A DNA stretch of 64,000 bases, taken from assembly GCF_044704955.1 (NCBI RefSeq), contig NW_027251778.1, positions 372,001 to 436,000 on the forward strand, read 5' to 3'. The position numbers were made by a program, and so were the translations under genes. Below the pieces are notes generated by a model. The model did no database searches and had not been told where the DNA came from. It saw only the letters and a list, made by a program, of their open reading frames with translations. Positions 28,194 to 63,895 of the stretch are shown in pieces. Position 1 is the first letter of the stretch; the number at the start of each line of letters is the position of its first letter. Source of the stretch: Pristiophorus japonicus. Lineage: Eukaryota.

Positions 28194-28246
28194 CTCTTCA
28201 GGCTACAGTTATTACTTCGGTGCAGGGACTAAGCTGACGGTGCTGG
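28194..28246 (+). CDS. TRBJ: TCR beta J11 (SSGYSYYFGAGTKLTVL)
   Basis: FGXG motif; donor G|GTGAG; RSS AGTTTTGTT-12-CACTGTG (28166-28193). Confidence 0.94.
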
Positions 28247-32262: not shown

Positions 32263-32283
32263 TGCCCTGTGGAATAAGTAAAG
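32263..32283 (+). CDS. TRBC: TRBC exon 2 (hinge, interchain Cys): VPCGISK
   Basis: Polypyrimidine tract, then ttttcag|TGCCCTGTGGAATAAGTAAAG|GTGAG; phase 1-1. Confidence 0.92.
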
Positions 32284-33279
32284 GTGAGTTCATCATAGAA
32301 TCATAGAAAGTTACAGCACGGATAGTGGCCATTTCGGCCCATCGTTTCCGTGCCGGCCGACAAAGAGCTATCCAGCCTAGTCCCACTTTCCAACTCTCGG
32401 TCCATAGCCCTGTAGGTTGCAGCACTTCCAAGAACATATCAATATGTGGAGAGGGTTTCTGTCTACACAATCCTTTCAGGCAGTGAGTTCTGCCCCAGAC
32501 CTCCACCATATTTTGGTGTAGGAAATTCCCCTCAAAACCCTCTAAACATTCTATATCCCTCTGGTTGCTGACGCCTCTGCTATGGGTCCTTCCTAGCCAC
32601 TCTATCCAGGCACCTCATAATCTCGTACACCTCACTCAAATCTCCCCTCAGCCTCCACTGTTCCAAAGAAAACAACCCCAGCCTATCCAATCTTTCCTCA
32701 TCGATAAAATGCTCCAGTTCTGGCAAGATCCTGGTAAATCTCCTCTGTACCCTTTACAGTGCAATTACATATTTCATGTAATGCGGTGACCAGAACTGCC
32801 CATAGTACTCTATCTGTGGCTTAGTAATATTGTATACAGTTCAGGAGTAACCTACTGATCTACTATATTTATGCCTCGGCTTATAAAGGCAAGTATCCCG
32901 TATGTCTTCTCAACTAACTTATCGACCTGTCCGGCTAACTTCAGGGATCTGTGGACCTGTGCTCCAAGGTCCCTCTGTTCCACTACACATTTCAGTGCCC
33001 TAAAATTTAATGTTATTCCCTTGCCTTGCTAGCCCTCCTCAGCTGTATTTCTATTTGCTTTTGTCAAATCGTCACCACGTATAATTGATAATTGTGGAAT
33101 TATTTACCATGTGAGACATTTCAACTGCTTTCTCAGTTCAAAATTTTCAAACTGCTGTTCTAATTTGACGAAAATGTTACGTTCACCAATGAATTTATGA
33201 GCAACACCTTGATGGAGAGGGAGGTCAGATCAATTGGTTTGCCAGACGAGGTTGGTCCAAATGGATGAGCCTCGTGGTC

Positions 33280-33665
33280 AGGGGAGAAACGTATAAGATT
33301 ATGAGGAGGCTTGACAAGGTAGATGCAGAGAGGATGTTTCCAATGATGGGGGAGACTAGAACTAGAGGGAATGAACTTAGAATAAGGGGCCGCCCATTTA
33401 AAACAGAGATGAGGAGAAATTTCTTCTCTCAGAGGGTTGTAAATTTGTGGAATTCGCTGCCTCAGAGAGCTGTGGAAGCTGGGACATCGAATGCAGTGAA
33501 GACTGAAATAGACAATTTCTTAAACGATAAGGGGATATGGGGTTATGGGGAGCGGGCGGCGAAGTGGAGCTGAGTCCATGATCAGATAAGCAATGATCTT
33601 TTTGAATGGCGGAGCAGGCTCCAGGGGTCGCATGGCCTACATTTTTCTTTAGTTATATTCTTATG
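33280..33665 (+). mobile_element. CR1 LINE 3' fragment
   Basis: Encodes ETYKIMRRLDKVDAERMFP...RNFFSQRVVNLWNSLPQ. Confidence 0.85.
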
Positions 33666-33977
33666 TCATCTGGGACAGGGTTTCAAGTCACCGACACCGA
33701 CAGGAAGATTATATTTCCCTGTGATGATGGGGAAGAAATGCCTGGGAGTTAGCGGGTGAGGAGGGGGGAGACATTTGTGTTAAACCTTAACCTTCCTTCT
33801 GTGAAATCCTTGTACGCATCTGTTCCAGCATTAAGACGTGTTTTTTTTCCTCTGACCTGAGAACTCACTTTTAGCGTGGAAGCAAGTCTTCCTCGATTTC
33901 GATGGATTGCCTTTGATGATGATTCTTACACTGAGAGATCAAAAATGCCAACATTGTTCATTATATTCACTTCACAG

Positions 33978-34084
33978 ATGCTAAAATGCAAAGTATGACG
34001 ACAGCCAAATTGACATATCTGATCCTGATCTGTAAGAGCATCTTTTACGGAGCGTTCGTGTCGATACTTGCTTGGAAAGCTAAG
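33978..34084 (+). CDS. TRBC: TRBC exon 3 (connecting peptide + TM): DAKMQSMTTAKLTYLILICKSIFYGAFVSILAWKAK
   Basis: ttcacag|AT...AAG|GTAAG; 107 nt; conserved TM motif Y-x5-K-x3-Y. Confidence 0.95.
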
Positions 34085-34689
34085 GTAAGATTAAACTAAT
34101 TAAAGACCTTAAAAATAGTCATTAAAAGCTGAAGCTGGGTCCTTTCCACAGTTAACAGTAACACCAGAAATGAACAACAACAGTTTGCTGTCACTGGCCC
34201 TTTCCCGAAACTCCTCTGCAAAATATTTTAGCAAGCAAAACTTGACTCCACATTCATTCCAACTATTCCAACTGCATATAACATTATTGGATAACTCCAT
34301 CCCCGTCTTGTTATTACACAAAATTAGGACTCGTGCAATTGGGGATAATATATTCGCATGGATTGAAAACATAAGAACATAAGAAATAGGAGCGGGAGTA
34401 TGCCCTTCTGCCGGTCTAGCCTGCACCGCCATCCAATGAGATCATGGTTGAACCGATCATGGACTCAGCTCCAGTTCCCTGCCCTTTCTCCATAACCCCT
34501 GACTCCCTTGTCGCTCAAAAATCTATCTATGTCCATCTGAAATATATCCAATCACTCAGCCGCCACAACTCTCTGAGACAGCGAATTCCACAGATTTACA
34601 ACCCTCTGAGAGAAGAAATTCCTCCATATCTCAGTTTGAAATGGGCGGCTCCTTATTCTGTCGGAGGACCTGTAGAATTTGTATTCGAT

Positions 34690-36590
34690 GCATAGAAACT
34701 TAGAAAATAGGTGCAGGAGTAGGCCATTCGGCCCCTCGAGCCTGCACCATTCAAAATAATCATGACTGATCAGGCAACTTCAGAAGGCTATTCCTGCTTT
34801 CTCTCCATACCCCTTGATCCATTTAGCCATAAGGGCCACATTTAACTCCCTTTTGAATATATTTAACGACTGGCCTCAACAACTTTCTGTGGAATAGAAT
34901 TCCACAGCTTCACAATTCTCTGAATGAAGAAGTTTCTCCTCATCTCGGTCCTAAATGGCTTAATCATTATCCTTAGACTGTGACCCCTGGTTCTGGACTT
35001 CCCCAACATCAGGAATATTCATCCTGCATCTAACCTGTCCAATTCCTTCAGAATTTTATATGTTTCTAAGAGATCCCCTCTCAGTCTTCTAAATTCCAGT
35101 GAATATTGGTCTAGTCGATCCAGACATTCTTCAGATATCAGTCCAGGCTTCCCAGGAATCAGTCTAGTGAACCTTCGCTGTACTCCCTCAATAGCAAGAA
35201 TGTTCTTCCTCAGATTAGGAGACCAAAACTGTACAAAATATTCAAGATGTGGCCTCACCAAGGCCCTGTACAACTGCAGTAAGACCTCCCTGCTCCTATA
35301 CTCAGTTCCTCTCGCTATGAAGGCCAACATGCCATTGGTGTTCTTTTTCACCTGCTGTACCTGCATGCCAACTTTCAATGACTGATGTACCATGACACCC
35401 AGGTCCCGTTGCACCTCCCCTTTTCCTAATCTGTCACCATTCAGATGATATTCTGCCTTCCTGTTTTTGCCACCAAAGTGGATAACCTCACATGTATCTA
35501 CATTATAGTGCATCTGCCAAGCATTTGCCCACTCAACTAACCTGTCCAAGTCACCCTGCAGCCTCTGAGCTGCCTCCGCACAGCTCACACTGCCACCTAG
35601 CTTAGTGTCATCTGCAAACATCATTCAATTCCTTCGTCTAAATCGTTAATGTAGATTATAAATAGCTGGGGTCACAGCACTGTCACTGACCACTAGTCAC
35701 TGCCTGCCAATCTGAAAAGGACCCGTTTGTCCCGACTCCCTGCTTCCTGACTGCCAACCAGTTCTCTATCCACATCAATACATTACGCCCAATACCATTT
35801 GCTTTCATTTGGCACACTGATCTCTTGTTTGGGGCCTTGTAAAAAGCCTTTTGAAAGTCCAAATGCACCACATCCACTGGTTCTCCCTTGTCCACTCTAC
35901 TAGTTACATCCTCAAAAAATTCCAGAAGATTTCTCAAGCATGAATTCCCTTTCACAAATACATGCTAACTTGGACCGATCCAGTCACTGCTTTCCAAATA
36001 AGCTGCAATTACATCTTTACTAATTGATTCCAAGCCGGTCTATAATTCCCTGTTTTCACTCTCCCTCATTTTTTAAAAAGTGGGGTTACATTAGCTACCC
36101 TCCAATCCATAGGAACTGATCCAGAATCTATAGAATGTTGGAAAATGACCAGCAATGCATCCACTATTTCTAGGGCTATTACCTTATATACTCTGGGACA
36201 CAGACTATCAAGCCCTTGGGGATATATCGGCCTTCAATCCCGTCAATTTCCCGAACACAATTTCCTGACTAACAAGGATTTCCTTCAGTTCCTCCTTCTC
36301 GCTAGACCCTCGGTCCCCTAGTGTTTCCGGTCGGTTATTTGTGTCTTCCTTCGGGAAGACAGAACCAGAGTATTTATTCATTTGGTCTGTCAATTCTTTG
36401 TTCCCCATTATAAATTCACCTGATTCTGACTTCAAGGGAGGAACTTACTTTCGTCTTCACTAATCTTTTTCTCTTCATATATCTATAGAAGCTTTTGCAG
36501 TCAGTTTTTATGTTTCCTGCAAGCTTACTCTCGTACTCTATTTCCCCCCTCCGAATTAAACCCTTAGTTCTCCTCTGCTGAATTCTGAAT
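34690..36590 (-). mobile_element. CR1 LINE ORF2 RT fragment in TRBC intron 3
   Basis: Motifs FADDTKLGG, VDKGEPVDVVHLDFQKAF and LVRPHLEYFVQFWSP. Confidence 0.9.
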
Positions 36591-36827
36591 GAAGCGAGTT
36601 GTCACAATCTGCATCGCACTGCTTGAAAGGGCAGTGGGCGCACATTGATTAGTAACATTCAAAAGGGAGTTGGATAAATATTGGAAGGCGGGTGGGATTC
36701 AGGGCGATGGGGAATGAGCAGGGGGAGTGGGAATAATTGGATCGCTCTATAAAATTGCCAGCACAGGCAGGTTGGGCCGAATCATTCTTTGCAGATAATA
36801 ACACCCTCTGTTTTTTTTATATACTAG

Positions 36828-36854
36828 GCCTCTTACAGTAAAAGGTTTGACTGA
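36828..36854 (+). CDS. TRBC: TRBC exon 4 (cytoplasmic tail): ASYSKRFD*
   Basis: T-rich tract, then atactag|GCC...GAC TGA, phase 0. AATAAA at 36868-36873 and 37505-37510. Confidence 0.88.
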   Translation, partial: ASYSKRFD

Positions 36855-48104: not shown

Positions 48105-49276
48105 AATGAGTTACAAAGAGAGAAGTCCATTCCGGAGAGATAAAGATAAAGAAATATACGTTGTTAGCAGCCTAGTCGAAGAGAGAAAGGAGGCATCGCT
48201 TCTAGCTCAACCAGTTCAGCTAGCGTAACTTCTCAGCCAGCTTAACCAAGCTTTAATAGGAAGAATAAAGAGTTAACGGATTACTCAGAGGGTGCAAGTC
48301 TAGGTGGGGTAGAGGAATAAAGGGATCTCGGAGTACAAATACACAAATCGCTCATAGTTGCGACACAGGTTCACAAGGGCATGAACAAAGGCAAACCAAG
48401 AACTAGGGTTTATTTCTAGATGTATAGAATTGTAAAATAGGGAACTATTGCTACACCTATATCAACCTTGGCTCGAACACATTTGTAGTACTGCATACAG
48501 TTCTTTTCAGCATATTATAAAACTGTTATGGAGACATTGGAGAGGGTGCAAAGAAGATTTACAAGGATGATACCAGAAATGCGAGGATATATATATGAGA
48601 AAAGGATGAAGAGGCTGGGTCTCTTTTCTCTTGAAAGGGGTGATCTAATAGAGATCGTTAAAATTGTGAAAGGTTTTCAAAGAGTGGACACAGACTTGTG
48701 AGGAAGAGCCTAACTGCAGGCCATCAATATAAGATAGTCACCAAAAAATCCAGCAGTGAATTCAGAAGAAATGTCTTCACCCAGAGAGTGATGAGAATGT
48801 GGAACTCGCTACCACTGGGAGTGGTTGAGGTGAATAGTAGAGATGCATTTAAGAGGAGGCTAGACAAGCATATAGGAAAAAGGGAATAGAGGGTTATGCT
48901 GAGAGTTAGATGTGGAAAGATGGGAGAAGGCTCGAGTGGAGCATAAACGCCGGCATGGACTGGTTGGGCCGAATAGCCTGTGTCTCTGCCGTATATCTGA
49001 TGCAATTGCCGATGCAAAATCAGCCTGCTACAAATGGTTAAATAGAGAAAACAGAAATTTGGGCATAAATTCTAATGTGCTGTAATCGCACAGTATCCAA
49101 CAAAACTATTATCTTTAAGCATAATGGGTCTTCAATGACGGGAAGTGGCAAAACTTACAGTAATCAGCAGAAATGACAACATGTCAATTGCACAATTATA
49201 ATCCCATCGCCTTCTGCTTAGTTCACATTTCTGTTTGAAGGACATGTTGTATAGCTGACTCTCTGGCCCCAGGAGT

Positions 49277-49309
49277 TTAATCAAAGCCTTTTGCCAACTT
49301 GCCCGAGTA
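49277..49309 (-). CDS. Second TCR-beta-like C gene, last exon (cytoplasmic): YSGKLAKGFD*
   Basis: Minus strand: ctgac...ctctttttccttcctcttgcag|TAC TCG GGC AAG TTG GCA AAA GGC TTT GAT TAA. Phase 0, ending K-x-F-D* like TRBC exon 4. Confidence 0.85.
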   Translation of the reverse strand, partial: YSGKLAKGFD

Positions 49310-50344
49310 CTGCAAGAGGAAGGAAAAAGAGCGTGTCAGTAACAGATTTATTCCTTGACCATTGCATTTTTAAAATTCGTTCCTGAGATGAGGGTCAGCA
49401 TTTATTGCCCATCCCTAATCGCTCTGAAGAAGGTGGTGGTGAGCCGCCTTATTTAACTGCTGCAGTGCGTGTGGTGAAGGTACTCCCACAGTGCAGCTCG
49501 GGATGGAGTTTCATGATTGTGACCCAGCGATGATGAAGGAAAATCCGATATATTTCCAAGTAAGGATGGTGTGTGACTTGGAGGGGAGCGGGGAGGTGAT
49601 GGTCTTCCCATGCGCTTGCTGCCGTTGTCCTTCGAGGTGGCAGAGGGCACGGATTTGGGAGGTGCTGCCGGAGAAGCCTTGGCGAGTTGCTGCAGGGCAT
49701 CTTGCAGATGGTGCAAACTGCAGCCACGGTGCGCCGGTGGTGGAGGGAGTGAATGTTGAAGGTGGTGGGTCGTGTGCCGATCAGGCGGGCTGCTTTGTCC
49801 CGCATGGTGTCAGAGCAGCACACTAGATTGCACTCCTCCCCCAACCCCCACGCCCCGGTTACATAGAAACATAGAAACATAGAAAATAGGTGCAGGAGTA
49901 GGCCATTCGGCCCTTCTAGCCTGCACCGCCATTCAATGAGTTCATGGCTGAACATTCAACTTCAGTACCCCATTCCTGCTTTCTCGCCATACCCCTTGAT
50001 CCCCCTAGTAGTAAGGACCTCATCTAACTCCTTTTTGAATATATTTAGTGAATTGGCCTCAACAACTTTCTGTGGTAGAGATGGATTGACAACCAGAGGA
50101 AACAGGTTTAAGATAATTGGCAAAAAAACATAGCGAGAGATGAGATTTATGGGAGCAGATTCAACAGTAAATATCATGAGGGAAAGAGGTTTGAAAGGGG
50201 AAAAGTTTGTAGAGCTATGGGAATTGAGCTGAGGAGGGGAATTAACTGGATTCTGTGCTGTGGGATTGAAATGATTCTCAATGATTCAACGCCATCGCTG
50301 GTTGAATTCAATTGATGTCTAACGAGGGAGCAAAATGTGGAGAT

Positions 50345-51650
50345 GAATGAAGAGAGTGTTCGACGACCAGGCCCTCAAATCTGGCACGAAGCTCATGGTC
50401 TACAGGGCTGTAGTAATACCCGACCCTCCTGTATGGCTCGGAGAATTGGACCATGTACATTCACACTTCCCAAGCCATCACCATTTAAATAATACTTTGT
50501 CCTTATGTTTTTCCTCCCAAAGTGGATAACTTCACATTTATCCGCGCTAAACTGTATCTGCCATGTGTTTGCCCACTCACTCAACCGGTCTCAATCGCCC
50601 TGCAGCGTCTCTGCATGCTCCTCACAACTCACAATTCACCTAGTTTTGTGTCGTCAGAAAACTTGGAAATATTAACAATCACACGACACATTACCAGTTC
50701 ATCCACCAGGCTAACAACCACCTGCCCCATCGTGGATCCCCCGAACCCAACTGGTCGGGGTTTTATTGAGTCTTGTGAACATCACGTGACCGGCTCAGTC
50801 ACTCCCAACTCTACCAACCTGTGAGCATTACTCACAGGGGCACACATTACTGCTGTTCCAAGTGTTCGACAATCAGGCCCTCATATCCATCACCAAGCTC
50901 ATGGTCTACAGGGCTGTCGTAATACCCGCCCTCCTGTATGGCCCAGAGACATGGACCATGTACAGTGGGTATCTCACCCCCAGCTCATGGACTACAGGGC
51001 TGTAGTGATACACACCCTCCTGTATGACCCAGAGACATGGACCATGTACAGTAGGTATCTCACCCCCAGCTCATGGTCTACAGACTGTCGTAACACCCGC
51101 CCTCCTGTATGGCCCAGAGACATGGACCATGTACAGTAAACACTTCAAGTCGCTGGAGAAATACCACCAATGCTGCCTCCGCAAGATCCTGCAAATCCCC
51201 TGGGAGGACATCCCCAGCATTGAAGACTGACCACACTCGTCTGCATGCCCCGACACGAGACTCCCAAAGCGCTCTACTCGGAACTCCTACACGGCACGCG
51301 AGCCCCAGGTGGGCAGAGGAAACGATTCATGGACACCCTCAAATCCTCCCTGATAACATGCAACATCCCCATTGATATCTGTGAGTCCCTGGCCAAAGAT
51401 CGCCCTAAGTGGAGGAAGTGCATCCGGGAGGGCGCTGAGCACCTTGAGTCTCGTCGCATGCAGAAAGCAAATGCAGGCAGCGGAAGGAGGGTGTGGCAAA
51501 CCAGACTTCCCCACCCACCCTTTGCTGCAACCACTGAGAGTCGCACCTGTGACAGAGACTGTAATTTCTGTACTGGATTGTTCAGTCACCTGATAATTCA
51601 CTTTCAGAGCGGAAGCAAGTCTTTCTCGTCAGGGAGGGACTGCCTATGAT
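50345..51650 (+). mobile_element. RTE-type LINE 3' fragment with internal triplication (about 50895-51140) and a nested CR1 piece
   Basis: Motifs LLYGPETWTMYSKH, LEKYHQCCLRKILQIPWED, GGQRKRFMDTLKSSL and a C-terminal CxxC..H remnant. Confidence 0.8.
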
Positions 51651-52844
51651 GACCGCCAGACAGCAACCTGGTTGGTCAAGTACAAACTTGGTCCAATGCA
51701 GTTTAGTATGACGTACGTTGGCATAGGGGCGGTATTACTGGATTAGTAATCCCGCAGGTCTAAACTAATGATTTGGGGACATGAGTTCAATGCCCACCTC
51801 AGCAAGTGAAGAATTTAATTCCGGTTCAATAATCTGAAACTTAAAGATGGTTATTAGTAATGGTGACCATGAACTTGTCAGACTGTTGGAAAAATCCATC
51901 TGGTTCATTAATGGGAAGGAAATCTGCTGCCCTTACCCGGTCTGGCCGATATTTGAATCTAGATACATATTTGACACATCACTGCCGTTTGAAATGCCCA
52001 GCAGACCATTCAATTGTATACAGAGGTTCAGGACCATCTTCTCAGGGGCAATTAGGGATGGGAAATAAATGCTGGCCTTCAACGAATAAATAAATAAAAA
52101 TGTGGCTATACGGGTTAAGCTAATTTTGGGATATTTCACCTCTAATCTTCAACTTCCTACCAGGAACCATTCCCTCTGTCATACACTCCCTCTCACTGTC
52201 TCTGTCTTTGTGTGTGTGTCTCTCCGTCTCTCTCTCTCTCTCTCTCTGGAAAACTCTCACTGTCTCTGTCTCGTTCTCTCTCTACCTCTCTCTCTCTCTG
52301 TTTCTCTGTCTCTGTCTGTGTCTCTCTCTCTCCGTCTCTNNNNNNNNNNNNNNNNNNNNNNNNNNNNNNNNNNNNNNNNNNNNNNNNNNNNNNNNNNNNN
52401 NNNNNNNNNNNNNNNNNNNNNNNNNNNNNNNNNNNNNNNNNNNNNNNNNNNNNNNNNNNNNNNNNNNNNNNNNNNNNNNNNNNCATCTCTCCTTCTCCCT
52501 TTCTCTGTCTCGCTCGCTCTATCTCTCTTTGTCTCTCTCCCTCAATCTATCTCTCCCTCTCTGTGTTCCTCATTGGGGAGGGGAGAAACATTCAGAAAGC
52601 CTTCATGCTGGATCTTGCTAAATGCGTTGTCTATTAGTATTATTGGAGGTTGTGCCTCACTCAGTTGAATCAAAGCACATCGTGGTCAAATAGCTGTCTG
52701 TCTCTCCTTCTGTCTATTTCACTGTCTATTCTCGGGCACGATTGACTTGAATTGGGGGCAGTAGGAGTCACTCAATGGGACCTGAAACTTTGCGAAAGAG
52801 GGAATTAGATACATTCTACAGTGGAACAAAATGTCTAACCTGTA

Positions 52845-53460
52845 TAGAAATAGGAGCAGCAGTAGGCCATTTGGCCCCTCGAGCCCGCACTGCCAATCAA
52901 TATGATCATGGCTGATTCTCTGTCTCAACAACACATTCCCCCTTTCTCCCCGTAACCCTTGATGCCCTTTGTGTCCAGAAACCTATCCATCTCCCTCTGA
53001 AATATATTCCTTGAATTGGCCTCCACAGCCTTCTGTGGCAAAGAAATTAGGGAAAATTTCTCTTCATCTCGGTCTTAAATTTCCTACCCCGTATCCTGAG
53101 ACTGTGACGCCTTGTTCTAGACTTCCCAACCCGGGTAAACATCCTCCCCGCATCCAGTCTGTCCAGCACCAAAAGAATTTTACAGGTTTCAATGAGATCC
53201 CTTTCATTCTTCTGAACTCGAGTGAATACGGGCCTACTCGACCCAATCTCTCGTCTTACGATAGTCCTGCCATCCCAGGAATCAGTCTGGTGAACCTTCG
53301 CTCAACTCCCTCTATGGCAAATGCATCCTTTCTTAGGTAAGGAGACCAAAAACTTTAACCTTTATAATAGATCTAACATTTTCCCTACTACTGCTGTTAG
53401 GCTAACCGGTCTGTAGTTCCCGTTTTGTCTCTCCCTCCTTCATTAAATAGTGGGTTACAT
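52845..53460 (-). mobile_element. CR1 LINE fragment
   Basis: Encodes GRVGPYSLEFRRMKG, followed by a CR1 tail. Confidence 0.78.
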
Positions 53461-53495
53461 TTTCCATGCTCCGGTCTGCAGGGAACTTCTCATAC

Positions 53496-53605
53496 CTTCA
53501 ACTTGAGCACCAGGATGGTGACTACGGCCATGTAAAGTATGCTCTTGGAGATGAGTAAAGTATACGTTGTTTTTGCGAGAATTTGTTGATTTTGGACACG
53601 CTCCG
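53496..53605 (-). CDS. Second TCR-beta-like C gene, connecting peptide + TM exon: AERVQNQQILAKTTYTLLISKSILYMAVVTILVLKLK
   Basis: Minus strand: ttcctgtgtcttgcag|CG GAG...TTG AAG|GTATGA. 110 nt, phase 1-0, with the Y-x5-K-x3-Y TM motif. 16/27 residues from AK to the final K match TRBC exon 3. Confidence 0.92.
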
Positions 53606-54559
53606 CTGCAAGACACAGGAAGTAGGAGAAAATTGATTGCCGCGAAATTCCACTTCAGTGAAAACAACTTGCATTGACATAGCACCCTTCCCATCCTGTT
53701 CTCAGAAGCATAAATCGGACAAATATTGACACCGAGCCACAGGATGAGATACTGGCGCTGAAATTGCGTTCTGAGGCCTCCCACCTGAAACACTTCTACG
53801 CCAGTATCTGGTGGTCCCGGAGGGGCGTGGGCTTGCGGGGGAGGGGGTGGGTGGTGTGCTTTTCTTCCCGCGCTGCGAAGTGCGCTCCCTTCCTCCAGGT
53901 TCGAACCGCAGACGTGTGACTGATCAGACAATCAGGTACAGTATACTTACTGTAATATCAATGGGAACTCATTGATATTAGTTGAGAGAAAATAACCCAA
54001 ACACAATAACACCGCATTAAAAATTAAAAACACACCTCACATAATTAAAATTAATTGAAATTAAATGTAATAAATGAATCAGAGAAAAAAAGTTGCGAGT
54101 TTTCAAAAAGTTTTTAAAATTATTGTTTAAAATAAATTTAACATAGTGGGCTGGGATTTTAAAAATAAAGTGTGTTCTTTAAAGTTTATTTTATTATATT
54201 TTTGCAAGTTTTTAAGCACTTACACCTGTAATAGTGGGCGATATACTGCTTTTATCAGGCGCAAAAATTTTGAGGCTATTTTCTGGGCAACATATGTGAA
54301 TGCTCGCAATCTTGCCCTTACAAATGTTCTCCCTCCCGAGATACGTGCGATCTGTCAAGCTCCACCTTGACAGATCGGAAAAGGCGGTTTTCTGTGCATG
54401 CATCGGCTTTTGCGATGCCATCCCAAGTAAGTCCAAGATTTCCAGGCCATTAATACAGGCGACCAAATACCGGTATGTATTCAGGAATCTAAAAAGAGAG
54501 TTAGAGGGGCAGAGGTGGACAGATATAGGGAGGGACTGACAGAGCTTCGCACCAAGGTA

Positions 54560-57500
54560 ACATAGTTCTCAGAGGGGATAGTTCAGCTGGAGGGGTGTTA
54601 CAGAGATAGGGAGGGGTGCAGAGGCTGGGGGCGGGGGGTTACAGAGATAGGGAGAGTTCTAGGGGCTGGAGGAGATTACAGAGGTAGGGAGGGATGTAGG
54701 GGATGGAGGAGGTTACAGAGATAGGGAGGGGTATAGGGGCTGAACAAGGTTGCAGAGATATGGAGGGGTGTAGCGGCTGGAGGGGATTACAGTGAAAGGG
54801 AGGGGTGTAGGGCTGGCGGAGGGTACAGAGATAGGGAGGGGTGTAGTGGCTGGAGGAGCTTACAGGAATAGGGAGGGTTGTTGAGGCTGGAGGAGGTTAC
54901 ATAGATAGGGACGGTTGTATGGGGTTTGAGGACATTACACAGATATGGATGGCTGTCGGGACTGGAAGAGGTTACATAGATAGGGAGGGTTGTACGGACT
55001 GGAAGGGTTACAGAGATAGGCAGGCGTGTAGGGGCAGTAGGAGGTTACAGAGATAGGGAGGGGTGTAGTGTATGGTGGAGGTTACAGAGATAAGGAGGGG
55101 TGCAGGGACTGGAGGAGGTTACAGAGATACGGAGGGGTGCAGGGACTGGAGGAGGATACAGAGATAGGGAGGGGTTTAGGGGCTGGAGTAGGATACAGAG
55201 ATAGGGAGGGGTGAAGGGGCTGGAGGAGCTTATAGAGTGATGGAGGGGTGTAGGAACTGGAGGCAGTTGCAGAGCAAGGGAGTGGTGTAGTCGGATGGAG
55301 GATGTTGCAGAGATAGGGAGGGGTGCATGGCCTGGAGGCGATAACAGAGATCGGGAAGGGTATATCGGCTTGAGGTGGTTACAATGATAGGGAGGGCTGT
55401 AGAGGCTGGAGTAGGTTACAGAGCTATAAAGGGGTATAGGGTCCTGAACAGATTACAGAAACAGGGAGGTGAGTAGGGGCTGGAGGAGGTTACAGGGATA
55501 AGGATGGTGTAGGGTTTGGAGGAGTTTACAAAGATAGGAGGGGTGCAGGGGAAGGAGGAGGCTGCAGAAATAGGGAGGGGTGTAAGGATTTTTGAGTGTT
55601 ACAGCGACAGGGAAGTGTGTATGTTCTGCAGGTCGTGTAGAGGCTGGAAGCGGTTAAAGACATAGGGAGCGGTGTATCTGCTGATGGAGGTTACAGAGGT
55701 AGGGCGGAGTTTAGGGGCTGGAGGAGGTTACATAGATAGGGAGGGTTGTACGGGTTGGAGGGGGTTACAGAGATACAGAGGGGTGCAGGGGCTGGAGGAG
55801 GTTACAGAGATAGGGAGGGGTGTAGGGGCTGGAGTAGGATACAGAGATAGGGAGGGGTGAAGTGGCTGGAGGAGGTTACAGAGATAGGGAGGGGTGTCGG
55901 AGCTGGAGGAGGTTACAGCGATAGGGAGGGGTGTAGGGTCTGGAGCAAGTTGCAGATATAAGGAGGGGGTAGAGGCTTCAGGAATTTACACAAATAGGGA
56001 GGGGTGTAAGGGCGGGATGGGATAACAGAGGTAGGGAGATGCGCAGGGGCTAGAGGAGGTTGCAGAGTTAGGGGGAGGTGTGGAGGCTGGAGGAGGTTAC
56101 AGCGATAGGAATGGTTCTAGGAGCTTAAGGAGGTACAAGAGATCGGGTGGTGTGCAGGGGAAGAAGGAGGTTGCGGAGATAGGGAGGGGTGTCGGGGTGT
56201 CTTGAAAGTTGCAGTGATAGGGAAGAGTGTATGGTCTGCAGGTGGTTACAGAGCTAGCGAGGGGTGTAGGAGCAGGAGTTGGTTACACAGCTAGGGAGAG
56301 GTGTAGGGGCTGGAGGATGTTACAGATATAGGGTAGAGTGCAGGTGCTGGAGGATGTTACAGAGATAGGGACGGATGTAGGGGCTGGAGGAGGTTACAGA
56401 GATAGGGACGGCTGTCGAGGCTGGAGCAAGTTCCAGCGACATAAAGGGGTGTAGGGTCTGGTGGTATTTACTGAAATAGGGAGGGGTGTAGGGGCTGGAG
56501 GAGGATACAGGGATAGGGAAGGGTGTATGGTCTGCAGTTGGTTACAGAGCTCGGGATTGGTGTAGCGTCTGGAGCAGGTTACAGAGATTGCGAGTGGTGT
56601 AGAGGCTGGAGGCGGTGACAGAGAAAGGGAAGGGTGTAGGGGCTGGGGGAGGTGACAAAGATAGGGAGGATTAAACGGGCTGGAGGGCATTACAGAGGAA
56701 GGGATGGGTGTAGTGGGTTGGAAGACGTTACAGAGATAGGGACGGGGTAGAGGGATCGTGTTACAAGGATAGGGAGGGGTGTAGGGGCTGGAGGAGGTTA
56801 CAGAGATAGGGGGGGGTGTAGGGGCTGGAGGGGGTTAAAGAGATAGGGAGGGGTGTACGGGCTGGAGGAGGTTACAGCGATAGGGAGGTGTGTAGGGGCT
56901 GGATGAGCTTACAGAGATAGCGCGATGATTGTAGAGTCTGGAGGGCCTTACAAGTTAGGGAGAGGTGCAGGTGTGGACGGGGTTACATAGATATGAACGG
57001 GCATAGGGGCTGGAGGACGTTACAGAGATAGGGAGGGATGTAGGGCTGGTGGAGGTTAAGGAGATAGGGAAGGGTGTAGGGGCTGGAGGAGGTTACAGAG
57101 ATAGGGAAGGGTGTAGGGGCTGGCGGGGATTACTGAGATAGGGAGGGGTGTAGGGGCTGAAGGAGATTACAGAAATAGGAAGTGTATCGGGGCTGGAGGA
57201 GGTTACAGAGATAGGGAGGGGTGTAGCGGCTGGAGGAGGTTACAGAGATAGGGAGGGATGTAGGGGCTGGAGGTGTTTACAGAGAAAGGGAGGGATGTAG
57301 TGTCTGGAGGAGCTTAAAGATATAGGGAGGTGTGTACTAGCTGGAGGAGGTTAAAAAGATAGGGAGTGTTGTAAGGACTGCAGTAGTTTACAGAGATAGT
57401 GAGTGATGTATGGGCTGGAAGTGGTGACAGATATTGGGTGGGGTGTTGGAGCCCGAGGAGATTAAAGGGATCGCGAAGGGTGCTCGGGCTGGAGAACGTT

Positions 57501-60500
57501 ACAGAATTTGGGACGGGTGTAGGGGCTGGAGGATTTTACAGATTGTGGAAGGATTTTACGGGCTGGAGGAGGTTACAGAGATGGGGTGATTATAAGGATT
57601 GGGGGAGGTTACAGGTATAGAGGCGGGTGTTGGGGCCGGAGCAGGTTACAGAGTTAGGGAGGTGTTTCGTGGCTGGAGGAGCCTACAGTGATAGGGAGGT
57701 GTTTCGTGGCTGGACGAGTTTACAGAGATAGAGAGTGGTGTAGGATCTGGAGGAGGTTACAGAGATAGGGAGGGGTATAGAGGTGGAGGAAAAACATAAA
57801 AAACCTCACAAAAAAAACAAACCCGCCCCCAAAAAAAAACACAGAAAAGGGCACTAGAAAACTGTTTGCAATGTTCCTCCTATTTTTAATCAGGTGGCAC
57901 TTGATTTAATTGTTTATTTTGTCTTCAACTACAAGATTTGCCGAGGTGGAGGAGGTTACAGTCATATGGAGGTGTGTAGGAGCTGGAGGAGCAAACGCAC
58001 ATCGGGATGATTGTAGGGGCTGGAGGGGTGTACAGAGTTAGGAAGAGGTGCAGGGGCTGGAGGGGGTTACAGAGATAGAGAAAGGTGCAGGGGCTGGAGG
58101 AGGTTACAGAGATAGGGAGGGGTGTAGGGGCTGGAGGAGGTTACAGAGAAATGGAGGGGTGTAGAGGCTGGAGGAGGTTACAGAGATAGGAAGGGGTGTA
58201 GGGGCTGGAGGAGGTTACAGAGATAGGGAGAGGTGTAGGGGCTGGATGAGGTTACAGAGATAGGGAGGGGTGTTGGGTCTGGAGGAGGTTACAGAGGTAG
58301 GGAGCGATGTAGGGGTTGGAGGAGGTTACAGAGATAGGTAAGGGTGGGGTGGCTGGAGGTAGTTACAGAGAAGGGAATGTTGTAGGAGCAGGAGGAGGTT
58401 GCAGAAATCTGGAAGGACTATCGGGGCTGGAGGTGTTTACAGATATAGGAATTTGTGTAGTACTGGCGGTGGCAACACAGTCAGCGAGGGGTGTAGAGGC
58501 TGGAGGACGTTGCAGATTTAGCGAGGTTTTTTGGGACTGTAGAAGGTTACTGAGGCAGGGAGGGTGGAGGAGCTGGAGGAGGGAGGAGGTTATAGAGTCA
58601 GGGAGGGCTGTAGGGCTGGAGGGGGTTACAAAGATAGGGAGTGTTGTAGCGGCTGATGATAGGGAGGGTGGAGGTGCTGGATTGGGCTACAGTGATATGG
58701 CGGTGTGTAGAAGTTGGAGGGGTTTATAGTGACCGTGATGATTTTAGGGGCTGGAGGGGATTACAGAGGTTCAGCGAGGCTGGAGCATGAAACAGAGATA
58801 GGAAGGTGTGTACGGGCTGAAGGAGGTTAGAGAGATAGGGTGGGTTTCGGGGCAAGAGTAGGGTTTTAGCGATTGCAGGGTTTTACAAGAGGATGTTACA
58901 GAGATCTCGATGGTTGGGGGAGGGGGCGTTACAGAGGTAGGGAGGCGTGTATAGGCTGGGAGAGGTTGCAGAGATAGGGAGGGTTCTAGGGGCTGGAGGA
59001 GTTTACAAAGATAGGGAGGGGTGTAGTGACAGGAAGAGATTTCAGAGATCGGGATAGGTATAGGGGCTGGAGGAGGTTACAGAGTTAGGGAAGGCTGTGG
59101 GGAATGGAGGAGGTTACAGAGATAGGGACGGGTGTAGGAGCCAGAGGAGGTTACAGAGATAGGGAGAGCTGTAGGGACTGGAGGTATTTACAGAGATAGG
59201 ATGTTGTTTGGTGCTGGAGGTGGTTACACAAATAGCGAGGGGTGTAGGGGCTGGAGGATGTTCCAGGTATAAGGAGGGGTGTAGGGGCTAGAGGATGTTA
59301 CACAGATGGGGCGAGGTGTAGGGACTGCAGGGTGCTACAGAGATGGGTGCCTTGTAGTGGTTAGAGGCGGGTGTAGGATCTGCAGGATGTTACAAAGGTA
59401 GGGAGGCATGTAGGGGCTGGAGGACGTTACAGTGATAGGGAGGGTGTAGCGGATGATGGAGATTACAGAGACAGGGAGGGTGGAGGGGCTGGAGGGGGTT
59501 ATCGTGAAATGGAGGCGTATAGGAGCTGAAGGATGTCACCGGGATTGGGGTGGTTGTAGAGGCGGGAGAGGGTTGGACATGTAGCAAGGGATGTAGGGGC
59601 TGGAGGAGGTTAGAGAGTTTGGGAGGATTTTAGGGGCTGGAGAAGGTTACAGAGATCGTGGGGTTTTAGGGGTTCGATCAGGTTAGATAGATAGAAGGGT
59701 GTGTAAGGACTGGAGGAGGTCGCAGAGATAGGGAGGGGTGTAGAGACTGGACGAGTTTACAGAGATAGGGAGGTGTTTACTGGCTGAAGGAGGTTACAGA
59801 GATGGGGAGTGTTGTATGGGCTGAAGGAGCATTCTGAGCTAGGGAAGGCTTTCGGGGCTGGAGTTGCTGACAAAGATAGTGAGGACTTTAGGGAATGAAG
59901 GAGGATACGGAGAAAGGGCGGGGTGTGCGGGCTGGAAGAGAGTACAGAGATAGGGAGGGGTGTAGGAGCCTTCGGATGTTACAGAAATAGGGAGAGCTGT
60001 CGGGGCTGGAGGTGTTTACAGAGATAGGGAGTTGTGTGGTGCTGTTGGAGGTTACCCCTCCCTTTCTCCGTATTCTCCTCCATTCCCTATAGCCCTCCCT
60101 CTGTCGGTAAGCACCTCCAGCCCTTATAGCCTTCTCTAGCTCAGTAAACTCAGATAGCGAGGTTCGTAGAGGCTGGAGAAAGTTCCCGGTATCAGGAGAG
60201 GTATAGGGCTGGAGGATGTTACACAGATAGGGGGCGATGTAGGGACTGGAGGATGTTACAGAGGTGAGTGCGCTGTAGTGGCTGGAGGAGGTTACAGAGA
60301 TATAGCGGGGTGTAGGAGCTGGAGGATGTTACATAGATCTCGATGGTTGGAGAGGCGGGGGTATTACAGACGTAGGGAGGCGTGTATAGGCTGGGAGAGG
60401 TTGCAGAGATAGGGAAGGGTGAAGGGGATGGAGCAGTTTACAGAGATATGGAGGGTTCTATGGGCTTGAGGACTTTACAGAGATAGGGAGGGTGGAGGGG

Positions 60501-61180
60501 ATGGAGAGGGTTACAGTGAACTGCATGGGTGTAGGAGCTGGAGGATGTTACAGAGATAGAGATGGTTGCAGGGATTGGAGGGGGTTGCAGAGCTAGGGAA
60601 GTGTGTAGGGGCTGGAGGAGGTTACAGAGATATGGAGAGCTGTGCTGGCTGGAGGTGTTTGCAGAGATGGGGAGCGGTGAAGGGGCTGTAGGGGTTTGCA
60701 GAGATGGGGAGCTCTGTAGTGAATGGAGTGGGTTACAGAGAAAAGGAGGGGTGTAAGAGCTGGAAGATGTTACAGAGATAGGGAGGTTTCTAGAGGCTGG
60801 ATGAGGTTGCAGAGAAAGGGAGGGGTGTAGGGGCTGAATGAGGGTCCAGGTATAAGGAAGGATGTGGGGGCTGGGTGATGTTAAACAAATTGGGAGTGGT
60901 GTAGGTGTTGGCTGTGATACAGAGCTCGGGAGCGGTGTAGTGGTTGTAGGGGGTTAAAGAGATGGGTGCTTTGTTGGGGTTGGAGGAGGTAACATGGATA
61001 GGGAGGGGTGTAGGGGCTGGAGGTGTTTGCAGAGATAGGGAGCAGTTTCGAGACAGGAGGAGCTTACAGAGCTAGGGATGGCTGACGGGGCTGGATGGGA
61101 TTTCAGAGATAGGGAGGGGTGTTGGGGCTGGAGGATGTTTCAGGTATAAGGAGGGGTGTAGAGGATTAGCGTCATACAGA
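54560..61180 (+). repeat. About 6.6-kb degenerate 37-bp G-rich minisatellite expanded inside an L2 fragment
   Basis: Unit GTTACAGAGATAGGGAGGGGTGTAGGGGCTGGAGGAG, roughly 175 copies, with L2-like flanks. Interrupted at about 57790-57945 and 60055-60150. Confidence 0.92.
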
Positions 61181-61684
61181 GATCAGAAGCGGGCGAGGCC
61201 ATGAAGGATTACGACAACAAGAATGAGAATTTTGAAACTGAGTTTTCGTCAGACCGGTGACCCATAGCGGGCGATTGGTGAAAGGGATTTGATGCTTGTT
61301 AGGGCACGGCAGGGGAAAGTAATAATAATAATATAGGATTTATTCCTGTCTCAACTTTAACAAAGCAGTCGACAATGTCCCCACAAGTCTCGGTTGGAAA
61401 CGCTTTCCATTACCTCGATCTCGAAAGCAGGGACTCCCTTGCTGGCCACCTCACGTTTGGAAGAATGCGAAATTATTTGAGAAGGTGCAGAAAAGCTTCC
61501 AGACATAAGGGATTTCAGTTACGTGGAGGGACTGGAGAGCTGGGATTGTTCTCCTGAGAGTAGAGAAGGTAGAGAGGAAATTTGATAGAGGTATTCAACA
61601 ACGTGAGCGGTCCGGACAGAGTAGTTTCCCGGCATCTCAAATGTTAGTGGCCCGAAACGGGGAGGTAGTGAATGTCTCTCCCTA

Positions 61685-62530
61685 TAAGAACAGAAGAACA
61701 TAAGAAATGCGATCAGGACTAGACCATTCGGCCCCAGGAGACTGCTCCGCCACTCAATAAGATCATGGCTGATCTAATCATGGACTCAGCTCCACTTCCC
61801 CGCCCGCTCCCCATAACCCTTCACTCCCCTATCGTTCAAAAATCTGTCTATCTCCGCCTTAAATATATTCAATGAACCAGCCTCCACAACTCTCTGGGAC
61901 AGAGTATTCCACAGATTTACAACACTCTGAGAGACAACATTCCTCATCAGCATCAGTTTAAAATGGGCGGCCTCTTATTCTAAGACTATGTCCCCTAGTT
62001 TTAGTTTCCCCTATGAGTGGAAATATCCTCTCTGCATCTACCTTGTCGAGCCCCCTCATTATCTTATATGTTTCGATAAGATCACCTTTTATTCGTCTGA
62101 ACTCCAATGCGTAGAGGTCCAACCTACTCAACCTTTCCTCATAAGTCAATCCCTTCATCTCCGGAATCAACGAGTGAATCATCTCTGAACAGCGTCCAAT
62201 GCAAGTATATCCTTCGTTTAAAAATGGAGACCAAAACTGCACGCAGTACTCCAGGTGTGGCCTCACCAATACCCTGTACAGTTGTCGCAGGACTTCTCTG
62301 CTTTTATACTCCATCCCCTTTGCCCTTTGCAATGAAGGCCAATATTCCATTTGCCTTCCTGATCACTTGCTGTACCTGCATGCTAACATTTTGTGTTTCA
62401 TGCACAAGTACCCCCAGGTCCCGCTGTACTGCAGCACTTTGCAATGTTTCTCCATTTAAATAATAACTTGCTCTTTGATTTTTCTTCTGCCATACTTTCC
62501 AACTTTATACTCCATCTGCCAAATTTCACT
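61685..62530 (-). mobile_element. CR1 LINE 3' fragment
   Basis: Encodes GMEYKSREVLRQLYRVLVRPHLEYCVQFWSP. Confidence 0.87.
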
Positions 62531-62824
62531 TTAACTATCCTGTCTGTGCCACTGAATATATTTTAAACTTCGATCAAATCAGCCCCTCATCTTCTACATT
62601 GCAGGCAATGCAACCACAGTACGTGTAATATTTCCATTTAATTTAACCCTTGGAATACTGGTATCATTCCAGTAAATTTCCGCTGCTGTTTTTCCAAGGC
62701 GCGGTGCCCAGAACTGAACAAAGTCCTTCAGTTGTGGTCTAAACAGGGCTTTGTAGAGCTGTATCAGGACTTCTAACAGCTTATATTCTAGTCATTTAGA
62801 AATAAAGGTAAGCACGGAAGCACA

Positions 62825-63745
62825 GAATACAAGAGAACTGTATAAAACACAAGTTAGGTCACAGTTGGAGTACTGCGTGCAGCTTTGTTCACCACATTTC
62901 AGGACAAAATATGATTGAATTGGAGAGGATACAGAGGAGATTTACCTGGATGTTGGATGAGAGAGGGTACAGAGGAGATTTACCAGGATGTTGCACGAGA
63001 GAGGGTACAGAGGAGATTTACCAGGATGTTGCACTGGAGAGGGTACAGAAGAGATTTACCAGGATGTTGGATGAGAGAGGGTACAGAGGACATTTACCAG
63101 GATGTTGCACTAGAGAGGGTACAGAGGAGATTTACCAGGATGTTGCACTAGAGAGGGTACAGAGGAGATTTACAAGGATGTTGCATGAGAGAGGTTACAA
63201 AGGAGATTTAAAAGGATGCTGCACTAGAGAGAGTACAGAGGAGATTTACCAGGATGTTGCACGAGAGAGTGTACAGGGGAGATTTACGAGGATGTTGTCT
63301 GAACTGGAGAATTTTAGCGATGAGGAAAGATTGGAGATGCTGGGGTTGTTTTCTTTGGAACAGAGTTGGCTGAGGGGAGATCTGATTGAGGTGTACACAA
63401 TTATGAGGGGCCTTTATAGAGTGGATAGGAAGGACCCGTTTCCTTTGGCAGAGGGACAACAACCAGGGGGCATAGAATTAAAGTAATTGGGGGTAGGTGC
63501 AGCGGGGATTTCAGATGAATTAATTTTACCCAGAGGTTGGTTGCCTCTGGATCTCAATACCTGAAAGGGTGGAAGAGGCTGAAACCCTCACCACATTTGG
63601 ATGTGCACCTTGAGGTGCCGTAATCTACAGGGCTACGGACCGAGAGATGGAAAGTGGGCTTCGGCTGGATAGCTGTTGGTCGGTTGGCACGGACACTTTG
63701 GGCCGAAATGGCCTCCTTCCGCACTGTAAATTTCTATGATTCTAT
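62825..63745 (+). mobile_element. CR1 fragment with internal 38-bp tandem amplification (about 62920-63300, about 10 copies)
   Basis: Unit GAGAGGGTACAGAGGAGATTTACCAGGATGTTGCACTA, from the ERVQRRFTRML coding stretch. Confidence 0.85.
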
Positions 63746-63877
63746 AAGTCCGTGAGCGTTTTTAATTGTTAATTCGGACCTGTCCAGGACAAATTAAAAC
63801 GAGCCCCTGAATGTGTGCGCGGGAAGGAGAGACAAAAACAGATCAACGCAGACATATAAAATATTGGGTGTGCTTAC

Positions 63878-63895
63878 CGGTCCCTTCACAGATGC
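63878..63895 (-). CDS. Second TCR-beta-like C gene, 18-nt hinge micro-exon: xICEGT
   Basis: Minus strand: tttcattttatttcttacag|GCATCTGTGAAGGGACCG|GTAAGC, phase 1-1. Places a Cys exactly 13 residues before the AKxTY motif, the same spacing as in TRBC. Confidence 0.82.

What the first reader, a model, noticed from the sequence alone, without database searches (positions are those of the whole stretch)
49277..63895. Hidden second, highly diverged TCR-beta-like constant gene, inverted and tail-to-tail with C-beta
Seen: three minus-strand exons, absent from the ORF track, with strong GT-AG signals and compatible phases (63878-63895, 53496-53605, 49277-49309). They splice to xICEGTAERVQNQQILAKTTYTLLISKSILYMAVVTILVLKLKYSGKLAKGFD*. 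The + strand C-beta gives VPCGISKDAKMQSMTTAKLTYLILICKSIFYGAFVSILAWKAKASYSKRFD*. Both share the exon plan (Cys micro-exon, TM exon, separate tail exon), the 13-residue Cys-to-AK spacing, the TM Lys and two Tyr, and a K-x-F-D end. Yet only 16/27 TM-region residues are identical and the connecting peptides barely align. Established: this exon layout and a single TM Lys are TRBC features, and mammalian TRBC1/TRBC2 are near-identical same-orientation duplicates. Inference: intact frames and splice sites across repeat-filled introns of 10.3 kb and 4.2 kb suggest purifying selection on an old paralog, i.e. a second beta-type chain or isotype able to bind CD3 and form a disulfide heterodimer. It could have its own inverted D-J(-V) cluster, use the same V pool by inversion, or be a V-less invariant chain. 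I cannot tell from here whether it has already been described.
Basis: partly seen in the sequence, partly recalled or inferred. Interest (0 to 1): 0.95.

Follow-up and report, generated by a model that had tools for sequence, protein, structure and literature searches.

The report
Diverged second shark TCR-beta constant gene
The three minus-strand exons are the real 3' end of a second, very old and deeply diverged T-cell-receptor beta constant gene. It is transcribed, is conserved in catsharks and whale shark, and lies tail-to-tail with the classical shark beta gene, but no paper I could search describes it.

Summary
Observation confirmed. The exons at 63895-63878, 53605-53496 and 49309-49277 (minus strand) have good splice sites and compatible phases. 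They follow the 18 / ~107 / short-tail exon plan of TRBC. The N gap at 52340-52483 lies inside an intron. A 1,116-nt contig from a public run joins 53496 directly to 49309, so that splice is used. The same contig carries 640 nt further upstream.

The TM exon is 28/36 identical to predicted proteins of Scyliorhinus torazame and S. canicula, and 25/36 identical to one of Rhincodon typus. NCBI calls the S. canicula protein 'M1-specific T cell receptor beta chain-like'. It is only 9-17/36 identical to every classical shark C-beta, including the published horn shark and nurse shark cDNAs. The orthologues carry a full C1 domain, a J-beta-like J and CASS-type V segments. A model of the whale-shark orthologue matches only TCR beta chains in the PDB top 50.

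This is therefore a conserved, expressed TRBC paralogue, about 32% identical to the classical C-beta. It is probably the C gene of its own inverted mini V-D-J-C cluster.

Multiple and opposite-oriented C-beta genes are already known in bamboo shark and in teleosts, so I class it as a new member of a known kind.

The scan has unverified notes that may concern the same unit: one on the adjoining window (s1-874507) and one on another piece of this genome (s1-877841).

The parts
63878..63895 (-). Exon 2 of the diverged TRBC gene: an 18-nt micro-exon (xICEGTa) carrying the connecting-peptide Cys. Exon 1 (the Ig C1 domain) lies beyond the window end.
   Evidence: The orthologues read GLCEGNA at this position.
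53496..53605 (-). Exon 3: 110 nt covering the end of the connecting peptide and the transmembrane helix, with the conserved A-K-x-T-Y...K-S-I-x-Y motif.
   Evidence: It is matched from 53606 to 53496 by bases 641-751 of the contig.
49277..49309 (-). Exon 4, coding part: YSGKLAKGFD plus the TAA stop.
   Evidence: It is 8/10 identical to the catshark tail. The contig joins 53496 to 49309.
48950..49276 (-). 3' UTR, at least this far.
   Evidence: The same 1,116-nt contig runs on without a mismatch to 48950. Further exact contigs cover 48400-48981.
49310..53495 (-). Intron 3 (4.2 kb, GT..AG). It contains repeats and the assembly gap 52340-52483.
   Evidence: Unique intron bins have depth 0-4, against 42 for the exons.
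53606..63877 (-). Intron 2 (10.3 kb). 6.6 kb of it is a 37-bp minisatellite at 54586-61161.
30098..36854 (+). Classical C-beta gene. Exons are 30098-30442, 32263-32283, 33978-34084 and 36828-36854. Its stop codon lies 12.4 kb from the stop codon of the diverged gene, tail to tail.
   Evidence: P0007 is the window's own gene model.
15861..28300 (+). One D-beta (GGGACAGGGGGGGG, flanked by 12- and 23-RSS) and 11 J-beta segments (FGxG motif) that feed the classical C-beta.
2..3436 (+). Three V-beta segments of the plus-strand cluster. The one at 3035-3436 has a canonical 23-RSS.

Best explanation
The three exons are exons 2-4 of a functional second type of TCR-beta constant gene, here called C-beta-div. 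It is an ancient paralogue of the classical shark C-beta and lies on the opposite strand, 3' end to 3' end with it.

Shown here:
- The exons exist with good splice sites and compatible phases.
- The exon 3 to exon 4 splice is used in RNA.
- Orthologues with an intact C1 domain, J and V exist in at least three other sharks of two orders.
- The gene evolves as slowly as the classical C-beta.
- Its C region is beta-type by fold, by exon plan and by locus.

Inferred:
- It is the constant gene of its own small inverted V-D-J-C cluster lying to the right of the window.
- After V(D)J joining it gives a beta chain. That chain would form the inter-chain disulfide through the micro-exon Cys and dock to CD3 through the conserved transmembrane Lys and Tyr residues.
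- It probably pairs with TCR-alpha and, with a single J, has a junction-restricted repertoire.
- The tail-to-tail layout would let the two clusters share 3' regulatory DNA. It could also let the inverted V segments reach the classical D-J-C by inversion.
For: Anatomy:
- The exon sizes 18/110/33 nt, the phase-1 entry, the Cys micro-exon and the separate tail exon parallel the plus-strand C-beta at 21/107/27 nt.

Expression:
- Record 5 of run X1 is a 1,116-nt contig at depth 42. It maps 53606-53496 and then directly 49309-48950 with no mismatch, and 640 nt of it lie 5' of the TM exon.
- Unique intron bins have depth 0-4.

Orthologues:
- phmmer of the 36-aa TM exon against 1.84 billion representatives gives only three hits: two S. 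torazame proteins and one R. typus protein.
- S. canicula 'M1-specific T cell receptor beta chain-like' is 93% identical to the S. torazame C region.
- TM exon identity is 28/36 to the catsharks, 25/36 to whale shark and 9-17/36 to all 25 classical-type proteins. The tail exon is 8/10 identical to the catsharks.

Constraint:
- The classical TM exon is 25-26/35 identical between the window and catshark.
- Whole C regions between catshark and whale shark are 64% identical for div, against 50-59% for the classical type.

Family:
- C-beta-div forms a clade with 97/97 support, apart from a 92/92 clade of all classical C-beta including skate.
- Foldseek's top 50 PDB matches for the whale-shark model (pLDDT 85.9) are all TCR beta chains at 31-36% identity.
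- The ESM Atlas nearest clusters by structure are TCR beta.
- Y, K, S, Y and K in the TM region are invariant across both paralogues.

Synteny:
- scyTo_0012005 (div) and scyTo_0012006 (classical) carry consecutive locus tags and their contigs have the same length, 215,987 bp, which I take to be one contig.
- In C. punctatum a minus-strand V array starts 46.6 kb downstream of the plus-strand TRBC_2 (PMC10322711 Suppl. Table 3). That is about the spacing expected here.
Against: - Exon 1, the J, the D and the V segments of this copy lie outside the window and were not seen, so intactness of this particular gene is not shown.
- Run X1 has no recorded library type. The contig's 5' 640 nt could be a germline (sterile) J-C transcript rather than a V(D)J transcript. 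Indeed, the catshark gene models read through the germline J heptamer.
- No protein-level, pairing or CD3 evidence exists.
- Two assembly gaps (40035-40233, 41286-41432) separate the two C genes, so the tail-to-tail orientation rests on scaffolding.
- Only three other species were found, and the searches were of low sensitivity.
Confidence: 0.8

Rival explanations
1. The gene is a transcribed relic in this species. The 3' exons are still spliced, but the gene is broken upstream (C1 exon, J or RSS), so no receptor chain is made.
For: Exon 1 and the J were not seen because the window ends at 64000. The contig may be a sterile transcript. No gene model for this copy turned up in the protein searches, although the classical gene's model did (P0007).
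Against: All three visible exons are open and have good splice sites. The TM exon is as conserved as the classical one across the same species pairs. The contig carries 640 nt upstream at depth 42. Orthologues in three species have intact C1 domains.
Confidence: 0.1
2. It is a TCR-gamma-type constant gene physically linked to TRB, not a beta gene.
For: The TM exon's only PDB sequence hits are TCR-gamma chains; the top three are named human TRGC1 TM helices. They are not significant (E 0.32-1.5). An ESM Atlas feature hit of 0.95 goes to a 'TCR gamma chain C region' cluster.
Against: Foldseek's top 50 are all TCR beta chains. The four-exon plan with an 18-nt Cys exon and a separate tail exon is that of TRBC and of the neighbouring C-beta. 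From my own knowledge, TRGC has three exon types and no tail exon. The J (YFGEGTRLTVLE) and the V ends (YFCASS) of the orthologues are beta-like. NCBI's similarity-based name is beta. The KS..Y motif in the TM region is shared by the classical shark C-beta too.
Confidence: 0.03
3. The gene is real, but the tail-to-tail inversion is a scaffolding artefact. The block right of the gaps at 40.0-41.4 kb would be mis-oriented or misplaced.
For: Two N runs lie between the two genes. I could not read long reads across them.
Against: In an independent assembly of another shark, a minus-strand V array lies about 47 kb downstream of a plus-strand C-beta. The S. torazame div and classical genes are neighbours. 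The div exons on both sides of the 52.3-kb gap agree in strand and order with the RNA contig.
Confidence: 0.1

Closest known systems
Classical elasmobranch TCR-beta constant gene (horn shark 'T-cell receptor homolog', nurse shark TCR beta cDNAs; the plus-strand gene of this window)
   Same: Same four-exon plan, same intron phase, a Cys micro-exon, TM Lys and Tyr residues, a tail ending in x-F-D, and the same locus.
   Different: Only about 32% identical in the C domain and 47% in the TM exon. It forms a separate clade. Its identity to human and mouse TRBC is 31-36%, against 25-30% for a classical type. The catshark orthologues' gene models show a single J, whereas the classical cluster here has 11.
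Bamboo shark TRBC_1 / TRBC_2 (Giorgetti et al. 2023, PMC10322711, Suppl. Table 3)
   Same: This shows that sharks have more than one expressed C-beta, in opposite orientations on one scaffold.
   Different: Those two have 7 J each and lie head-to-head. The classical-type sequences of galeomorph sharks fall into several lineages, and I infer that these two genes belong to them. The gene here is a further, far more diverged lineage and does not appear in that table.
Teleost duplicated TRB loci (salmonids and pike: two V-D-J-C loci in opposite orientation, PMC10464911)
   Same: Two complete TRB clusters in inverted orientation on one chromosome.
   Different: The salmonid pair is head-to-head with V genes in the middle, and some J copies are identical between the two loci. 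Here the pair is tail-to-tail with the C genes in the middle and shows ancient divergence.
Squamate TRE (TCR-epsilon), a diverged duplicate of a TRB V-D-J-C cluster (PMC11754216)
   Same: A beta-derived V-D-J-C unit with a diverged C. Its V genes are related to the inverted V segments 3' of TRBC.
   Different: TRE is reported to be squamate-specific and is modelled as a translocated copy. This gene is in sharks and still sits inside the TRB locus.

Membership tests
TRBC (TCR beta constant gene) | Four-exon plan: C1 exon, ~18-nt exon with the inter-chain Cys, ~107-nt TM exon, short tail exon plus UTR; phase-1 entry | tested here: met
   Exons 2-4 are 18/110/33 nt and enter in the same phase as the neighbouring C-beta at 21/107/27 nt. 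Exon 1 lies outside the window.
TRBC (TCR beta constant gene) | Ig C1-set domain that is beta-type | tested here: inconclusive
   Not visible for this copy because it lies beyond 64000. The feature is met in the orthologues: PF07654 is present, Foldseek's top 50 are all TCR beta chains, and the clade is sister to classical C-beta.
TRBC (TCR beta constant gene) | Connecting-peptide Cys and a TM Lys with flanking Tyr residues (CD3 docking motif) | tested here: met
   The micro-exon reads ICEGT. The TM exon reads AKTTYTLLISKSILY. Y, K, S, Y and K are invariant in the alignments of both paralogues.
TRBC (TCR beta constant gene) | Served by D-beta and J-beta segments with 12/23 RSS and by V-beta segments | not testable with these tools
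   These lie outside the window. The catshark gene models contain J NAEQYFGEGTRLTVLE and V segments ending in YFCASS. An unverified scan note, s1-874507, reports a V array, one D and one J.
TRBC (TCR beta constant gene) | Transcribed and correctly spliced | tested here: met
   A contig joins 53496 to 49309 at depth 42, against 0-4 in unique intron bins. Only this one junction was tested.
TRBC (TCR beta constant gene) | Pairs with TCR alpha and assembles with CD3 | not testable with these tools
   No shark TCR-alpha or CD3 sequences were in hand, so no complex job was run.
TRGC (TCR gamma constant gene) | C1 exon, connecting-peptide exon(s), and one last exon holding TM plus tail; gamma-type C domain; no D segment | tested here: not met
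   A separate tail exon is present. The TM match to TRGC1 is not significant.

The most novel reading that the evidence does not exclude
The tail-to-tail pair may be the ancestral jawed-vertebrate TRB layout. C-beta-div would be as old as the split between cartilaginous and bony vertebrates. It could be the true counterpart of bony-vertebrate TRBC, given that it is closer to human and mouse TRBC than the classical shark C-beta is. The lone inverted V downstream of TRBC in amniotes and salmonids, and possibly squamate TRE, would then be remnants of this inverted mini-cluster. In sharks it would encode a junction-restricted beta chain that marks a distinct, perhaps innate-like, T-cell subset.
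Probability: 0.15. Interest if true: 0.8.

Novelty: new member of a known kind. Interest (0 to 1): 0.55.

Why it matters
Shark T-cell receptor work has used one type of C-beta. The published horn shark and nurse shark cDNAs, and probes or primers designed on them, all belong to the classical clade.

A second beta isotype that is conserved, transcribed and only about 32% identical would be missed by those probes and primers. It could define a separate T-cell population or a restricted repertoire.

Its position, tail-to-tail with the classical cluster, also bears on two open questions: how TRB loci with inverted V segments arose, and where extra beta-like chains such as squamate TCR-epsilon come from.

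The kind of thing is not new. Duplicated and diverged C-beta genes, and inverted TRB clusters, are documented in bamboo shark, teleosts, amphibians and birds.

Tried and rejected
I therefore could not fetch the catshark loci to check orientation, or to see exon 1, the J and the D.
- The look-up of sequencing runs gave only one run, of unrecorded type. The single read-laying run covered exons 3-4 only, so the exon 1-2 and exon 2-3 junctions are untested.
- The PDB sequence search with the whale-shark C region is swamped by multi-domain Ig heavy chains and does not discriminate between families.
- The TM exon against the PDB gave only non-significant TCR-gamma hits (the named ones are TRGC1). 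The classical TM exon gave no hits at all.
- The word-indexed protein searches are insensitive. Searches gave only 3 hits each, so absence from rays, chimaeras or other sharks is not shown.
- Dating the duplication: the best tree puts it before the shark-ray split. However, a tree with all shark sequences held together is not rejected (delta lnL 6.9, p-AU 0.108). The root is a single long-branched turtle Ig light chain.
- No bony-vertebrate TRBC, TRGC or TRE sequences could be brought in by reference, so that phylogeny was not done.
- Literature: nine full-text searches found no description of this paralogue. Pettinello et al. 2017 and Criscitiello et al. 2010 are not held, so prior description there cannot be excluded.
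- The search of earlier findings does not reach beyond the window end.
The TM exon was searched by reference; the micro-exon and tail peptides were only compared inside scripts. They were concatenated only inside a script, to check the reading phase.
No N run was filled.


Full report
**What is in the sequence**

- 63895-63878: 18 nt, polypyrimidine tract then ag before it, gtaagc after it.
- 53605-53496: 110 nt, ag before it, gtatga after it.
- 49309-49277: ag before it, ending in TAA.

In the one open phase they read xICEGTA, ERVQNQQILAKTTYTLLISKSILYMAVVTILVLKLK and YSGKLAKGFD*.

The plus strand of the window holds a canonical TRB cluster:
- three V segments at 2-3436;
- one D (GGGACAGGGGGGGG) with a 12-RSS and a 23-RSS at 15861-15874;
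- eleven FGxG J segments between 16.4 and 28.3 kb;
- a four-exon C-beta at 30098-30442, 32263-32283, 33978-34084 and 36828-36854.

The two C genes share the exon plan (21/107/27 nt against 18/110/33 nt) and the phase of entry. Their stop codons are 12.4 kb apart on opposite strands.

The TM exons are 17/36 identical. This is 11 SD above shuffles, and 0 of 5000 shuffles reach the score. Nucleotide identity is about 53%.

**The assembly gap**

The N run at 52340-52483 is inside the intron between the TM exon and the tail exon and affects no reading frame. I did not try to fill it.

Two other gaps, at 40035-40233 and 41286-41432, lie between the two C genes. The relative orientation of the genes therefore depends on scaffolding. 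This is the main caveat on 'tail-to-tail'.

**Expression**

Only one public run holds the stretch, and its library type is not recorded. Its contigs were laid on 48400-53700.
- Record 5 is 1,116 nt long at depth 42. Its bases 641-751 lie on 53606-53496 and its bases 752-1111 lie directly on 49309-48950, with no mismatch and no gap. This is the predicted exon 3 to exon 4 junction at GT..AG borders.
- Unique intron bins have depth 0 to 4. The simplest reading is spliced RNA of the same species.
- The contig has a further 640 nt 5' of the TM exon. That is enough for the micro-exon, a ~340-nt C1 exon, a J and about 235 nt more.
- I cannot tell whether that 5' part is V(D)J-joined or germline sequence. 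The junctions of exons 1-2 and 2-3 were not covered.

**Relatives**

phmmer with the 36-residue TM exon, given by reference, against 1.84 billion representative proteins gave three hits. Two are from Scyliorhinus torazame: GCB66422.1 'hypothetical protein scyTo_0012005' and XP_072356531.1 'uncharacterized protein'. One is from Rhincodon typus.

A follow-up search added the S. canicula protein 'M1-specific T cell receptor beta chain-like'.

These proteins end ...GLCEGNAERVRKQQIMAKTTYSLLISKSILYMATVIILLLKMKCSGKLAKHFD. Upstream of that they carry a complete C1-set domain, a J reading NAEQYFGEGTRLTVLE, and V domains ending in YFCASS.

Identity of the window's exons to these and to classical proteins:

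| Window exon | Catsharks | Whale shark | 25 classical-type proteins |
|---|---|---|---|
| TM exon | 28/36 | 25/36 | 9-17/36 |
| Tail exon | 8/10 | n/a | n/a |

The whale-shark gene model lacks the micro-exon and the tail exon, so the tail comparison rests on the catsharks.

The classical family includes the window's own gene model (P0007), the published Heterodontus 'T-cell receptor homolog' and four Ginglymostoma TCR beta cDNAs. It also includes proteins of Pristiophorus, Heptranchias, Mustelus, Scyliorhinus, Rhincodon, Chiloscyllium, Hemiscyllium, Stegostoma, Carcharodon and Leucoraja. The shark TCR beta of the literature is therefore the plus-strand type.

**Age and constraint**

The window's classical C1 exon is 32% identical to the whale-shark orthologue of the diverged gene, but 68% identical to Pristiophorus classical C-beta.

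In a maximum-likelihood tree of C regions, the diverged type is a clade with 97/97 support. It sits on a long branch, sister to a 92/92 clade of all classical sequences including skate. Taken at face value this puts the duplication before the shark-ray split. However, the alternative with all shark sequences together is not rejected (p-AU 0.108), and the root is a single turtle light chain.

What is firm is that both types coexist in the window's species, in catsharks and in whale shark.

The diverged gene is not fast-evolving:

| Comparison | Diverged type | Classical type |
|---|---|---|
| TM exon, window vs catshark | 78% | 71-74% |
| Whole C region, catshark vs whale shark | 64% | 50-59% |

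This is the signature of purifying selection, not of a relic.

**Beta or gamma?**

- An AlphaFold model of the whale-shark orthologue (pLDDT 85.9) finds only TCR beta chains among the 50 best PDB matches, at 31-36% identity. They include human TRBC1, human TRBC2 and the beta chain of TCR-CD3 cryo-EM structures.
- The ESM Atlas structure search also gives TCR beta clusters first.
- Against this stand only a non-significant TM match to human TRGC1 (E 0.32) and one feature-based Atlas hit. The classical shark C-beta has the same KS..Y TM motif.
- The separate tail exon, the J and V sequences and the location in the TRB locus all say beta.
- A model of a classical-type C region (Mustelus) matches the same PDB beta chains at only 25-30% identity. 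The diverged type is thus closer to mammalian TRBC than the classical one. The two queries come from different species, so I treat this as a lead only.

**Locus context in other sharks**

scyTo_0012005 (diverged) and scyTo_0012006 (classical) carry consecutive locus tags, and their contigs have the same length of 215,987 bp. I take them to be neighbours on one contig.

The S. canicula pair is on sequences of the same length, 225,974,235 bp, which I take to be the same chromosome.

Supplementary Table 3 of Giorgetti et al. 2023 (PMC10322711) lists two expressed C-beta genes for Chiloscyllium punctatum. They are in opposite orientation, head-to-head, with 7 J segments each. The table also lists a minus-strand V array that begins 46.6 kb downstream of the plus-strand TRBC_2. 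No minus-strand D-J-C is annotated for that array.

That spacing fits what the window plus the unverified scan note on the adjoining window (s1-874507: 'V array, one D, one J, one C within ~15 kb') would predict. The inference is that an unannotated diverged cluster sits there too.

**Comparison with what is known**

Multiple C-beta genes and inverted TRB clusters are documented in bamboo shark (above) and in salmonids and pike (head-to-head, with some identical J copies between the two loci; PMC10464911). Squamates have a diverged beta-derived V-D-J-C locus, TRE (PMC11754216).

I found no paper in the searchable library describing this deeply diverged elasmobranch C-beta lineage. Two key subscription papers were not held, so prior description cannot be excluded. 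Public gene models of the orthologues exist but are unnamed or named by similarity.

I therefore class it as a new member of a known kind. Its interest is moderate to good: comparative immunologists have likely been blind to it, and it bears on the origin of inverted V segments 3' of TRBC.

**Limits**

- The joined spliced model was not searched. The TM exon was searched by reference; the other two peptides were only compared inside scripts.

Noticed in passing
window 54586-61161 and 46468-47431: A 37-bp minisatellite (unit about GCTGGAGGAGGTTACAGAGATAGGGAGGGGTGTAGGG) fills 6.6 kb of intron 2 of the diverged gene. The same unit in reverse orientation forms a 1-kb array just beyond the gene's 3' end. 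The two arrays therefore bracket exons 3-4 as an inverted pair.
   Followed up: partly
window 40035-40233, 41286-41432, 22892-23340: There are further assembly gaps. Two lie between the two C genes, so the tail-to-tail orientation depends on scaffolding. One double gap lies inside the J-beta cluster and could hide J segments.
   Followed up: no
window 2-316 and 1348-1776: Two of the three plus-strand V segments have non-canonical heptamers (CGCAGTG and CACAGCG). The third, at 3035-3436, has CACAGTG, a 22-nt spacer and TCAAAAACA.
   Followed up: no
proteins P0009/P0011, P0015/P0016, P0017/P0024, P0020/P0027 (other sharks): Galeomorph sharks carry at least two or three distinct lineages of classical-type C-beta (tree). 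NCBI names several of them 'immunoglobulin lambda-1 light chain-like' or 'kappa light chain-like', which is evidently a mis-naming of TCR beta genes.
   Followed up: partly
proteins P0002, P0004, P0007: Automatic gene models of TRB clusters fuse two germline V segments, the germline J flank (read through the heptamer...SNTV|NAEQYF...) and the C gene into one 'protein' of 407-443 aa. The window's own classical model (420 aa) is of similar length.
   Followed up: partly
C. punctatum scaffold ccg_chipu00000117 (PMC10322711 Suppl. Table 3): V arrays lie downstream of both annotated C-beta genes in the opposite orientation. TRBV01-11 (+) lie left of TRBC_1 (-), and TRBV17-24 (-) lie right of TRBC_2 (+). 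This suggests a mirrored pair of unannotated inverted clusters, or V use by inversion.
   Followed up: no
window 62923-63297: A 38-bp tandem repeat of about 10 copies (89% matches) lies inside a long plus-strand ORF, just downstream (minus-strand sense) of the micro-exon, within intron 2 of the diverged gene.
   Followed up: no
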